From Oopsacas minuta (Eukaryota; Animalia; Porifera): 64,000 nucleotides of DNA. The position numbers and the translations under genes are program-made. Of this stretch, positions 28,576-31,599 are shown piece after piece. How positions within the stretch are numbered: the first letter of the stretch is position 1; every line of letters begins with the position of its first letter. The notes under the pieces were generated by a model, which had not been told where the DNA came from, did no database searches, and saw nothing but the letters and a program-made list of their open reading frames with translations. The stretch spans positions 496,001 through 560,000 of the forward strand of contig JAKMXF010000066.1 of NCBI GenBank assembly GCA_024704765.1. The letters are read 5' to 3'.

Positions 28576-28756
28576 CCATCAGTCTTATATTTTATATAAG
28601 ATATTTCTCATATGTATTATTATTATTATTATTATTGGTCTACTTTGTATACTATCAGTTGTTCTTTAAGTATATTACAATATACAATAAAATTAAATAT
28701 TTTCAACAGTAACCTCTTGTTATAACGAAGTGTTTAGTTCTGTTCAGAAGTATAAT

Positions 28757-29602
28757 ATGTTAAACAAACACTCAGAACCAATAATCACATTGGGTCATCA
28801 ATGCAAGAGTCCTGGTAAGCTATTCAAACCGCACGGAATAGCTATTAATGAACAGAATACTCTCTTGTATGTTGCTGAAGGTATTGGCGTATCTCGAATT
28901 TCTACATTTACCTGTGAAGGGGATTTTGTGACTTGTTTCACAGATAAGAGAATGCTAAGTAGTACGTGGGGTATTGCTGTTATTAAGGATAATATTTATG
29001 TAACAGATATGGACGAGGATTTATTAATCAATTTCCAACAAGAAGGTCTCTTGTGCCGTGTTACTGTTGTAGGTGGCTATGGGTCAGGGGATGATGAGTT
29101 CAAAGGTCCCAATCAGCTGGCTGTTTCTAATAAAGGAGACATATATGTAGCTGATGTTTGGAATAACCGAATTAAAGTATTAGATAGTAATCTCATATTT
29201 CTATATAGCATCATACATGCTTTATTAACATTCCCTGTTGATGTTCAATTGCTACCAAATGAACTGTATGTTCTCAGTTGCGAGGATTCGCCATGTGTAC
29301 ACGTGTTCTCTTATAAAGGAGAAATGTTACGGTCGATGATTACCCAGGGAGACGGGATGCAAGTCCATGGAGCGAGTTTTTTCTGTCTTGACTCTGCTAA
29401 TAATATATTTATTAGTGATTGGGGTTGTCATCAGGTGAAAATATTCTCAGATAGAGCACTAGTACAGGTAATTGGAGAGGAGGGTCATGAAAAAGGAATG
29501 TTCTGGTATCCTTATGGAGCTACTATTACAATTGATTCAATAATTATTATTGTATCACTGAACAGGAATTATACATTACAGATATTTGATGTGCAAATTT
29601 GA
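28757..29602 (+). CDS. NHL-repeat beta-propeller protein
   Basis: Repeats FKPHGIAI, TWGIAV..IYVTD, FKGPNQLAV..IYVAD..NNRIKV, FPVDV, IFISDW. First ATG is at 28757. Confidence 0.88.
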   Translation: MLNKHSEPIITLGHQCKSPGKLFKPHGIAINEQNTLLYVAEGIGVSRISTFTCEGDFVTCFTDKRMLSSTWGIAVIKDNIYVTDMDEDLLINFQQEGLLCRVTVVGGYGSGDDEFKGPNQLAVSNKGDIYVADVWNNRIKVLDSNLIFLYSIIHALLTFPVDVQLLPNELYVLSCEDSPCVHVFSYKGEMLRSMITQGDGMQVHGASFFCLDSANNIFISDWGCHQVKIFSDRALVQVIGEEGHEKGMFWYPYGATITIDSIIIIVSLNRNYTLQIFDVQI

Positions 29603-29826
29603 TATAGTTTTTACAGATTATAGTATTCTGTATATTTGTAAATGAACGGGAAATGTTTACTTTGTAATTATTTTTAGCCAATTTACGGTTTTAATCTGGG
29701 TATTTTTAATTCTTGACTGTTTTACTTACGTATTATTATGTTATTTTAGAACAACAAATAAACAAACAAACAAACAACAAATTTGGTATCGCTCCTCCTA
29801 TTATGGTTATTCGTCGACTGGGAAAT

Positions 29827-29991
29827 ATTTCAAAATATATGGAAAGATAGTTTGAATAGAGATTTTCTAATTTTGCTGATTCCTGTGATTTAATAAATTT
29901 TCCCTACAACAGGTGTACCATATAATCTCCCTTCTTTGAAATAAGAGTATTAGGCCGAGTCTTATGAACTCTAAAGATAAGAATATGGATA
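29827..29991 (+). repeat. 165-bp direct repeat, copy 1 (left flank of 21-bp array)
   Basis: atttcaaaatatatggaaag...aagaatatggata is identical to 30899-31063 on base-by-base reading. Confidence 0.95.
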
Positions 29992-30898
29992 GAAAAATCA
30001 AGCAAAAATATAGAAAAATCAAGCAAAAATATAGAAAAATCAAGCAAAAATATAGAAAAATCAAGCAAAAATATAGAAAAATTAAGCAAAAATATAGAAA
30101 AATCAAGCAAAAATATAGAAAAATCAAGCAAAAATATAGAAAAATTAAGCAAAAATATAGAAAAATTAAGCAAAAATATAGAAAAATCAAGCAAAAATAT
30201 AGAAAAATCAAGCAAAAATATAGAAAAATCAAGCAAAAATATAGAAAAATCAAGCAAAAATATAGAAAAATCAAGCAAAAATATAGAAAAATCAAGCAAA
30301 AATATAGAAAAATTAAGCAAAAATATAGAAAAATCAAGCAAAAATATAGAAAAATTAAGCAAAAATATAGAAAAATTAAGCAAAAATATAGAAAAATCAA
30401 GCAAAAATATAGAAAAATCAAGCAAAAATATAGAAAAATTAAGCAAAAATATAGAAAAATCAAGCAAAAATATAGAAAAATTAAGCAAAAATATAGAAAA
30501 ATTAAGCAAAAATATAGAAAAATCAAGCAAAAATATAGAAAAATCAAGCAAAAATATAGAAAAATCAAGCAAAAATATAGAAAAATTAAGCAAAAATATA
30601 GAAAAATCAAGCAAAAATATAGAAAAATCAAGCAAAAATATAGAAAAATCAAGCAAAAATATAGAAAAATCAAGCAAAAATATAGAAAAATCAAGCAAAA
30701 ATATAGAAAAATCAAGCAAAAATATAGAAAAATTAAGCAAAAATATAGAAAAATCAAGCAAAAATATAGAAAAATCAAGCAAAAATATAGAAAAATTAAG
30801 CAAAAATATAGAAAAATCAAGCAAAAATATAGAAAAATTAAGCAAAAATATAGAAAAATCAAGCAAAAATATAGAAAAATCAAGCAAAAATATAGAAA
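29989..30898 (+). repeat. Minisatellite: 43 x 21-bp unit ATAGAAAAAT(C/T)AAGCAAAAAT
   Basis: 43 units counted. The only variation is C/T at one position (T in units 5, 8, 9, 16, 18, 19, 22, 24, 25, 29, 36, 39, 41). Confidence 0.97.
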
Positions 30899-31063
30899 AT
30901 TTCAAAATATATGGAAAGATAGTTTGAATAGAGATTTTCTAATTTTGCTGATTCCTGTGATTTAATAAATTTTCCCTACAACAGGTGTACCATATAATCT
31001 CCCTTCTTTGAAATAAGAGTATTAGGCCGAGTCTTATGAACTCTAAAGATAAGAATATGGATA
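30899..31063 (+). repeat. 165-bp direct repeat, copy 2 (right flank of 21-bp array)
   Basis: Identical to 29827-29991. Confidence 0.95.
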
Positions 31064-31293
31064 CAGATTTGTTTTATTGGTTATTAAGTTTTCTTACAGA
31101 TTTTAACGTGTTATTTAACGAATATTCATTCCATTAAAATACATCAGAGGTAATTTCTAGATAAAATTCAATTGTAATTAGCTTCGTATTTTAGTAAAAT
31201 TTAATAATTCAAATTTCAAAGATTGTATATTTGAATATTCAGGACATATAAGATTGGAGTTGTGAGAATAGAGCAAGTAAGTAAATATTATAA

Positions 31294-31599
31294 TCACAAA
31301 TATATTTCTAATTCTTGTTTTTCTAGCTGTATGAATTCTTCAATATCCTTCAAGTAGGTTCTTATATCTTCCTCCAATTCTTGTTTTTGTCTGTTAAGTG
31401 CAATTTTGGATTCCTTCAACCTGAAATATCTCGTTCCCTGTCGCAACTGCTCACGTCGTCTTTCTTTTCGCATTTCTTTAACCTTATCAGGGAATAAGTC
31501 TTTTATTTTCTTGGTAGTAAGTTTAACCAGATCTCTCCTCGTAATGGAACTGTCATTCCCTGAAAGATTTGAGTTTTGATAAAAATAAATATTATTCAT
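31294..31599 (-). CDS. Small non-canonical Maf/CNC-like bZIP protein (copy 1)
   Basis: DLVKLTTKKI..KERRREQLRQGTRYFRLK followed by Leu heptads. TATA-like gtataaatag at 31630-31639 on the minus strand. Confidence 0.7.
   Translation of the reverse strand: MNNIYFYQNSNLSGNDSSITRRDLVKLTTKKIKDLFPDKVKEMRKERRREQLRQGTRYFRLKESKIALNRQKQELEEDIRTYLKDIEEFIQLEKQELEIYL

What the first reader, a model, noticed from the sequence alone, without database searches (positions are those of the whole stretch)
29827..31063. A 0.9-kb pure tandem array inserted between two identical 165-bp direct repeats
Seen: structure X-[165 bp]-(21 bp)x43-[same 165 bp]-Y with zero mismatches between the two copies. The junctions show microhomology (ATA on the left; GAAA..ATTTC on the right). 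The repeats lack TG..CA LTR ends and there is no outer TSD. Inference: a very recent event in which de novo repeat synthesis accompanied a long target duplication (staggered break filled by iterative templated synthesis, target-primed reverse transcription, or MMBIR/Pol-theta repair). It is not an ordinary minisatellite expansion. An assembly artefact remains possible.
Basis: partly seen in the sequence, partly recalled or inferred. Interest (0 to 1): 0.75.

Follow-up and report, generated by a model that had tools for sequence, protein, structure and literature searches.

The report
Minisatellite between duplicated 165-bp flanks
In a glass-sponge genome, a 0.9-kb run of a 21-base repeat sits between two identical copies of a unique 165-base piece of spacer DNA; it is most likely the scar of one error-prone DNA-break repair that borrowed a repeat from a transposon-borne array elsewhere, which is an ordinary kind of mutation, and the raw reads needed to confirm it were not available.

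Summary
An exact 165-bp direct repeat (29827-29991 and 30899-31063) frames 43 head-to-tail 21-bp units plus 4 bases (907 bp). The array is not pure: 30 units carry C and 13 carry T at one position, in an aperiodic order.

The genome fits the Oopsacas minuta draft (61.46 Mb, 365 scaffolds). X, R and Y are single-copy intergenic DNA between two convergent genes, so R is not a transposon end.

The repeat was not made de novo. The T-unit occurs exactly 17 times, in 29-30-nt exact runs, in a degenerate 2.27-kb 10/11-bp array on another scaffold. That array grew in a hairpin loop of an integrase-bearing transposon family of at least 40 copies. The C-unit is derived here yet is the majority, so the array grew stepwise.

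Best reading (about 0.5): a short tandem duplication made by microhomology-mediated break repair captured a seed of that repeat at its junction, and ordinary minisatellite expansion followed.

An assembly artefact (about 0.2) cannot be excluded, because linkage of the two R copies rests on PacBio reads I could not see. A graph assembler would also make near-identical copies identical.

This is a new example of known processes, of modest interest. The scan had already noted this same stretch (s1-235770), not other DNA.

The parts
28730..29602 (+). Left neighbour gene (NHL-repeat protein ORF). Its stop lies 225 bp before R copy 1.
   Evidence: ORF. Pfam NHL PF01436, E 2e-15.
29603..29826 (.). 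X: unique left flank. It ends in GAAAT, and it holds a small AAC-rich microsatellite at 29750-29782.
   Evidence: Single copy in the genome. TRF.
29827..29991 (+). R copy 1: 165 bp of unique intergenic DNA. It contains an AATAAA at 29892.
   Evidence: Exact repeat. Only 2 genomic hits, both at this locus. No RNA family, no tRNA, no significant fold. AATAAA.
29992..30898 (+). Minisatellite: 43 units of 21 bp (GAAAAATYAAGCAAAAATATA; 30 C, 13 T) plus a partial unit GAAA. It has 86 A5 tracts spaced 11 and 10 bp alternately.
29989..29991 (+). Left junction overlap ATA, shared by the end of R and the end of the repeat unit.
   Evidence: The chance of any given 3-mer of this kind is about 0.04.
30895..30899 (+). 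Right junction: partial unit GAAA, then the first A of R. GAAA also precedes R copy 1, but there it is followed by an extra T.
   Evidence: p(GAAA) is about 0.006.
30899..31063 (+). R copy 2, identical to copy 1.
31064..31293 (.). Y: unique right flank, with an AATAAA on the minus strand at 31073.
   Evidence: Single copy..
31294..31599 (-). Right neighbour gene (101-aa mini-bZIP), convergent with the NHL gene.
   Evidence: ORF. The exact protein is in NCBI-derived collections, on one contig only.

Best explanation
This is a mutation scar, not a functional device. A DNA break arose in the 3'-3' spacer between two convergent genes and was repaired by an error-prone, microhomology-using pathway. 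One broken end was extended by about 165-170 nt on the sister or homologue and then joined to the other end instead of annealing. That duplicated the copied stretch R in tandem. At the join a short piece (30 nt or more) of a pre-existing A-tract repeat was captured. Its source was the family that grew inside a transposon hairpin loop and is now seen on scaffold C310. The captured 30-mer carries the same 9-nt word at both ends, 21 nt apart. It therefore slipped into a 21-bp tandem repeat and then grew to about 43 units by ordinary replication slippage and unequal exchange. During that growth a T-to-C variant arose and spread. Shown here: the duplication of unique DNA, the junction overlaps, the shared unit at a second locus, the TE origin of that second array, and the stepwise variant pattern. 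Inferred: the break, the pathway, the order of events, and that the seed was short rather than a ready-made array.
For: R, X and Y are single copy, so host DNA was duplicated, not an element end. The duplication is 165-170 bp with overlaps of 3 nt and 1 nt at the two joins. The 20-mer of the unit occurs at only two loci in 61 Mb, and the reversed-pattern control gave 0. The T-unit is exact 17 times in the C310 array, with shared runs of 29-30 nt. The C-unit is never exact there. The C310 array arose in place: most of the 40 or more copies of its host repeat have no array, and 3 copies have a 3-4 unit proto-array. That host carries integrase remnants. The unit cannot be pieced together from the local flanks, where the longest match is 8 nt. 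The variant order is aperiodic, with a duplicated 9-unit block and internal exact repeats up to 209 bp. The left edge of the duplication lies on a stretch that aligns 23/29 to the unit (shuffle p about 0.05), which could have guided the join. Known precedents: polymerase-theta joining of failed strand-annealing intermediates gives tandem duplications of about 100 bp to 10 kb, with microhomology and occasional templated inserts (PMC8654963). Satellite arrays spread to new loci at microhomologies, in some cases with a 32-bp duplication of the target (PMC7403614).
Against: There is no read-level, population or cross-species evidence. The junction overlaps are short (3 nt and 1 nt) and weak on their own. 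Known templated inserts are tens of bases, so the 0.9-kb array needs a second, separate expansion phase. Meanwhile the two R copies show no substitution. That is possible for a fast-evolving minisatellite, but the identity may be imposed by the assembler. The donor could equally have been a ready-made homogeneous array that is not in the assembly. This is a single case in the 264 kb sampled.
Confidence: 0.5

Rival explanations
1. Assembly artefact. The true locus has one R, or the two haplotypes differ, and the hybrid assembler threaded a wrong or chimeric path (or a wrong copy number) through a tangled repeat graph.
For: The pipeline was hybrid SPAdes (k 21-99) on Illumina plus Canu-corrected PacBio reads, followed by SSPACE, Pilon and GapFiller. 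R (165 bp) is longer than k. The array has many repeated 99-mers (multiplicity up to 6) and an internal exact repeat of 209 bp, longer than the 150-nt reads. Order, copy number and the linkage of the two R copies therefore rest on long reads alone. The same scaffold keeps a 211-N gap inside another array. A graph assembler makes near-identical copies identical by construction. No second assembly exists in the collections I could reach.
Against: All four junctions (X-R, R-array, array-R, R-Y) are distinct sequences, and a k-mer assembler does not invent them. The only linear path that uses all four is the one reported. The array-R junction cannot be produced by GapFiller's 10-nt overlap merge, because the array and R share only 1 nt there. 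GapFiller's 0.7 majority rule would stall on a 70:30 variant site. The aperiodic variant order looks read-derived, not cyclic filling. It is the only such structure in 264 kb, so it is not a systematic product of the pipeline.
Confidence: 0.2
2. Target-site-like duplication. Two nicks about 165 nt apart on opposite strands gave a staggered break. Both overhangs were filled in, and a ready-made array fragment (for example from extrachromosomal circular DNA shed by a repeat locus) was ligated between them.
For: The topology is identical to a giant target duplication. The repeat exists at an unlinked locus. Tandem-repeat eccDNA and its reinsertion at microhomologies have been proposed for insect satellites (PMC7403614; PMC11610590). 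Fill-in of staggered breaks into duplications is established knowledge from paired-nickase work; this rests on my own knowledge and was not checked here.
Against: The only other array in the assembly (C310) is heterogeneous 10/11-bp, not a homogeneous 21-mer, and the C-unit is absent from it. A fragment cut from it would not look like this array, so an unseen donor is needed. Complementary 165-nt overhangs would normally just re-anneal.
Confidence: 0.12
3. In-situ birth. R plus GAAAT first duplicated in tandem by slippage. The new R|R junction happened to resemble an A-tract repeat and itself slipped into the 21-bp array. The likeness to the C310 array is then convergence of low-complexity DNA.
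For: A reconstructed R|R junction aligns to the unit over 32 columns with two gaps, score 26. It would contain two similar 7-mers about 20 nt apart.
Against: The junction sequence differs from the unit by 2 substitutions and 2 indels in 21 bp, whereas the two R copies differ by nothing. The unit matches the C310 array exactly over 29-30 nt, 17 times, and nowhere else in 61 Mb.
Confidence: 0.07
4. One-step iterative templated synthesis. A polymerase or reverse transcriptase copied the same 21-nt template about 43 times during the repair event that also duplicated the target.
For: The 30-nt shared segment has 9-nt identical ends 21 nt apart, an ideal substrate for repeated primer re-alignment. 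Patchwork inserts from iterative polymerase-theta rounds are known (PMC8654963).
Against: One template would give identical or strictly periodic units. Instead 13 T and 30 C units are interspersed aperiodically, with duplicated blocks. Known iterative inserts are tens of bases, not 0.9 kb.
Confidence: 0.05
5. Retroelement tail-only insertion. This would be a fully 5'-truncated LINE inserted by target-primed reverse transcription, leaving only an A-rich repeated 3' tail and a giant target duplication.
For: The plus strand of the array is 67% A. Another reader noted an L2-type LINE flanked by a direct repeat of about 170 bp in this genome (s1-205413, unchecked).
Against: There is no retroelement sequence at either edge. 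The related C310 array sits in an integrase-type element, not at a LINE 3' end.
Confidence: 0.03

Closest known systems
Small tandem duplications from polymerase-theta end joining of failed strand-annealing intermediates (C. elegans helq-1 and brc-1 backgrounds; PMC8654963)
   Same: Direct duplication of unique DNA in the reported size range of about 100 bp to 10 kb. Short overlaps at the join. Extra DNA at the join whose template can be found elsewhere.
   Different: The insert here is 907 bp of tandem repeat, not a few to tens of bases. Its best template is on another scaffold. No genetic evidence for the pathway exists in sponges.
Spread of satellite arrays to new euchromatic loci by microhomology-mediated repair, interlocus template switching or eccDNA (Drosophila Rsp-like/1.688, PMC7403614; Tribolium Cast satellites, PMC11610590)
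   Same: The same repeat is present at unlinked loci. Junctions lie at microhomologies or A/T-rich sites. In four Drosophila clusters the target next to the insert is duplicated (32 bp). Local expansion by unequal exchange follows.
   Different: Only two loci are involved here, not a dispersing family. The target is unique spacer DNA, not an older satellite. The target duplication is five times longer. eccDNA was not tested.
Tandem repeats born inside transposable elements (central repeats of non-autonomous elements, for example Tetris in Drosophila virilis, as cited in PMC11610590)
   Same: The donor-type array on C310 grew from a 3-4 unit proto-repeat in the hairpin loop of a dispersed element.
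   Different: The array in this window has none of that element's flanks, so it did not arrive by transposition of the element.
LTR retroelement or other insertion with terminal direct repeats
   Same: Two identical direct repeats frame an internal segment.
   Different: There is no TG..CA, no outer short duplication and no coding or priming sites. R is unique in the genome.

Membership tests
Minisatellite | Head-to-tail array of a 10-100 bp unit | tested here: met
   21-bp unit, 43.4 copies, 97% matches, no indels.
Minisatellite | Interspersed unit variants and duplicated multi-unit blocks, indicating stepwise slippage or unequal exchange | tested here: met
   30 C and 13 T units in aperiodic order. 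A 9-unit block occurs twice. The longest internal exact repeat is 209 bp.
Minisatellite | Length polymorphism among individuals | not testable with these tools
   Only one assembly was reachable.
Microhomology-mediated tandem duplication with junction insert (TMEJ / template-switch class) | Tandem direct duplication of otherwise unique sequence, about 0.1-10 kb | tested here: met
   165 bp exact, or 170/169 bp with one indel. R occurs only here.
Microhomology-mediated tandem duplication with junction insert (TMEJ / template-switch class) | Microhomology at the joins | tested here: inconclusive
   3 nt (ATA) and 1 nt (A). GAAA recurs before both copies, but with a 1-nt offset. Too short to be significant alone.
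Microhomology-mediated tandem duplication with junction insert (TMEJ / template-switch class) | Insert traceable to a template elsewhere in the genome | tested here: met
   Exact 29-30-nt runs, 17 times, in the C310 array and nowhere else in 61 Mb.
Microhomology-mediated tandem duplication with junction insert (TMEJ / template-switch class) | Dependence on polymerase theta or another specific repair enzyme | not testable with these tools
   This needs genetics.
LTR retrotransposon | LTRs ending TG..CA, an outer 4-6 bp target duplication, and an internal PBS/PPT or gag-pol | tested here: not met
   R starts ATTTC and ends GGATA. X ends GAAAT and Y starts CAGAT. The interior is only the array.
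LTR retrotransposon | Repeat family present at other loci | tested here: not met
   R has 2 hits in the genome, both at this locus.
TIR transposon / MITE insertion | Terminal inverted repeats at the insert ends and a 2-10 bp target duplication | tested here: not met
   No inverted repeat lies at the array edges. The duplication is 165 bp. The flanks of the C310 element are absent here.
LINE insertion by target-primed reverse transcription | Retroelement 3' sequence or RT remnant inside the duplication | tested here: not met
   The insert is array only. The related array lies in an integrase-type element.
Satellite spread by microhomology-mediated insertion (Drosophila model) | An empty orthologous site in relatives or other individuals | not testable with these tools

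The most novel reading that the evidence does not exclude
The 165-170 bp duplication is not incidental. It may reflect a chromatin- or replication-set ruler, since it is about one nucleosome repeat or one Okazaki fragment long. Insertions in this sponge would then recurrently come with target duplications of 120-170 bp. Other readers noted a repeat of about 170 bp around an L2 LINE and a 122-bp repeat around a 9.7-kb segment in the same genome; both notes are unchecked. In that reading the array would have been laid down in the same event by iterative templated synthesis.
Probability: 0.06. Interest if true: 0.7.

Novelty: new member of a known kind. Interest (0 to 1): 0.3.

Why it matters
If real, the locus is a clean, datable natural example of how a tandem repeat born inside a transposon seeds a new array at an unrelated unique site. 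Both repair junctions and the duplicated target are intact, and it comes from an early-branching animal whose DNA-repair outcomes are essentially unstudied. It would also make a convenient polymorphic marker, with an expected empty allele of about 0.62 kb against 1.69 kb. It does not reveal a new mechanism or a functional element. If it is an artefact, it is a useful warning about exact bracket repeats in hybrid SPAdes assemblies.

Tried and rejected
(1) Transposon or LTR ends: rejected, because R, X and Y are single copy and there is no TG..CA, TSD or TIR.

(2) Shared flanks between this locus and the C310 array: none.

(3) Local templating of the unit from nearby sequence: the longest match is 8 nt.

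(4) A structured RNA, tRNA or SINE in R: none.

(5) A coding reading. An ORF runs through the array, (RKIKQKY)n, and the C/T variant is synonymous in it. That exact protein is in no collection, and any 21-bp A-rich repeat without stops gives such ORFs. I judged it spurious.

Two metagenome scans, one for R and one for the two-unit array word, found nothing. The bZIP neighbour is known from one contig only.

(7) A genome-wide survey for other bracketed arrays. The two similar structures noted by other readers could not be located or examined.

(8) GapFiller or SSPACE overlap-merge as the source of the array-R junction: rejected on the sequence, because the shared stretch is 1 nt against the required 10.

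Full report
**What is in the sequence.** The longest exact match gives a 165-bp direct repeat R at 29827-29991 and 30899-31063 with no mismatch. BLAST extends it to 170/169 bp if one 1-nt indel is allowed (GAAAT before copy 1, GAAA before copy 2). Between the copies lie 43 in-register 21-bp units plus a partial unit GAAA, 907 bp in all. The array is not pure. One position is C in 30 units and T in 13. The order is aperiodic, with no clear period at any lag from 1 to 21 units (best agreement 0.74 at lag 20), and one 9-unit block occurs twice. The end of R and the end of the unit share ATA. At the right join only one base is strictly shared. R lacks TG..CA, and X and Y share no short outer duplication. 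No inverted repeat lies at the array edges.

**Which genome and what context.** The window is G000:C66:496001-560000 of an assembly of 61,460,524 bases in 365 contigs. This matches the published Oopsacas minuta (glass sponge) draft of 365 scaffolds and about 61 Mb (PMC10280926), and other agents' notes name the same species. It is not human. The structure fills most of a 1,691-bp 3'-3' spacer between an NHL-repeat ORF (28730-29602, plus strand; Pfam NHL) and a 101-aa mini-bZIP gene (31294-31599, minus strand). Without the array and one R the spacer would be 619 bp.

**R is host DNA, not an element.** R has two hits in the whole assembly, both at this locus. X and Y have one full-length hit each, plus one 41-nt low-complexity match for X. 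R has no Rfam or tRNA match and no significant fold. In a contiguous 264-kb sample of the scaffold, the other exact direct repeats of 60 bp or more lying within 20 kb fall in two stretches (C66:370-376 kb and 397-406 kb). There, several segments match at near-constant offsets, which I read as tandem segmental or gene duplications. Two further pairs lie inside this array. Of 8 tandem arrays of 100 bp or more, only this one has duplicated flanks. The structure is therefore real in the assembly, is not chance, and is not a common product of the pipeline.

**Where the repeat unit comes from.** A 20-mer of the unit occurs at exactly two loci in 61 Mb: here, and in a 2.27-kb array at C310:628480-630753. 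The reversed-pattern control gave zero.

- The C310 array is a degenerate 10/11-bp repeat (81-84% matches by TRF). It contains the T-form of the 21-mer exactly 17 times, with shared exact runs of 29-30 nt. The C-form never occurs there exactly.
- The C310 array arose in place. Its left flank belongs to a dispersed repeat with at least 40 copies. In most copies the corresponding site is a short hairpin with no array. Three copies carry a 3-4 unit proto-array, and only C310 has the expanded one.
- The host element carries integrase-core remnants (rve, E 3e-07, just under Pfam's cut-off).
- The flanks of the two loci share nothing. The unit cannot be pieced together from local sequence, where the longest match is 8 nt.

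I conclude that the T-unit is ancestral and came from this TE-born repeat family, and that the C-unit is a local derivative. The shared 30-mer has the same 9-nt word at both ends, 21 nt apart. That is a textbook substrate for slippage into a 21-bp tandem repeat; this last step is my inference.

**How the array grew.** A derived variant in 70% of units, scattered aperiodically and with duplicated blocks, means many rounds of duplication and loss after the variant arose. That is ordinary minisatellite dynamics. It argues against one burst that copied a single template, which would give identical or periodic units.

**Most likely mechanism (confidence about 0.5).** A break in the spacer was repaired by a microhomology-using pathway. 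One end was extended about 165-170 nt on the sister or homologue and then end-joined instead of annealed. That duplicated R, and a short piece of the A-tract repeat was captured at the join. The seed then expanded.

- Precedent for the duplication: polymerase-theta joining of failed strand-annealing intermediates gives tandem duplications of about 100 bp to 10 kb, with microhomology and occasional templated inserts (PMC8654963).
- Precedent for moving a repeat: satellite arrays reach new loci at microhomologies, in four cases with a 32-bp duplication of the target. FoSTeS/MMBIR, interlocus template switching and eccDNA have been proposed as routes (PMC7403614; PMC11610590).
- A possible guide for the join: the left edge of the duplication lies on a stretch that aligns 23/29 with the unit (shuffle p about 0.05).
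- The break, the pathway and the order of events are inferred, not shown.

**Artefact (about 0.2).** The assembly used hybrid SPAdes (k up to 99) on Illumina and corrected PacBio reads, then SSPACE, Pilon and GapFiller.

- For an artefact: R is longer than k. The array contains 99-mers repeated up to six times and an internal exact repeat of 209 bp, longer than the 150-nt reads. Unit number, unit order and the linkage of the two R copies therefore depend on long reads I could not see. A graph assembler also renders near-identical copies identical, so "zero mismatches" is weaker evidence of youth than it looks. The same scaffold keeps a 211-N gap inside a (TCTATAT)n array.
- Against an artefact: the four junctions are distinct sequences that must exist in reads. 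The only linear path through them is the one reported. The array-R join shares 1 nt, not the 10 nt GapFiller needs. The variant order is not cyclic.

**Other rivals.**

- A staggered break with a ready-made array fragment needs an unseen homogeneous donor array.
- In-situ birth from an R|R junction fits worse, because that junction differs from the unit by 2 substitutions and 2 indels while C310 matches exactly.
- One-step iterative synthesis is contradicted by the variant pattern.
- A LINE tail-only insertion has no retroelement sequence behind it.

**Novelty.** This is a new example of known processes: TE-born tandem repeats, microhomology-mediated duplication with an insert, and minisatellite growth. 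The unusual points are the length of the duplicated target (165 bp) combined with a 0.9-kb array, and the traceable origin of the unit. Interest is modest (0.3). It would rise only if duplications of 120-170 bp prove recurrent in this genome, as two unchecked notes hint.

**Limits.** No relatives or reads were reachable.

Noticed in passing
L013:4480-6753 (G000:C310:628480-630753); L035-L039: A 2.27-kb 10/11-bp A-tract array sits in the loop of a short hairpin inside a dispersed element of at least 40 copies that carries integrase (rve) remnants. Most copies have no array, three have a 3-4 unit proto-array, and one has the full expansion. This is a clean series showing the birth of a minisatellite inside a transposon. 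A 9-bp word (TGTTCTCAG) flanks the hairpin on both sides, as if the hairpin were itself a nested miniature element.
   Followed up: partly
window 29992-30898 and L013:4480-6753: Both arrays keep A5 tracts spaced 11 and 10 bp alternately: 86 tracts here, with a mean spacing of 10.5 bp, the helical repeat. They should therefore be strongly intrinsically bent DNA. Whether this favours their growth or affects the two convergent genes is unknown.
   Followed up: partly
L026:2667-3059 (G000:C66:418667-419059): The only run of N (211 bases) in 264 kb lies inside a perfect (TCTATAT)n array that continues on the far side. The assembly pipeline leaves gaps in arrays it cannot cross.
   Followed up: partly
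L021:6115-7028 and L021:9136-9791 (G000:C66:372115-373028, 375136-375791): Tandem repeats of period 228 bp (76 codons, about 90% alike) lie in a segment duplicated about 3 kb apart. The consensus reads like ubiquitin units, so these may be two polyubiquitin-like genes with unusually diverged repeats. Not translated or searched.
   Followed up: no
L024:720-1397 (G000:C66:396720-397397): A second 21-bp minisatellite (32 copies, 86% matches) has an unrelated unit and no duplicated flanks. It lies at the edge of a cluster of tandemly duplicated segments (397-406 kb).
   Followed up: no
window 29964-30965 (+): An ATG-started 333-codon frame runs from R copy 1 through the whole array, (RKIKQKY)n, into R copy 2. 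The C/T unit variant is synonymous in this frame. The exact protein is in no collection, so it is probably a by-product of a stop-free 21-bp unit.
   Followed up: partly
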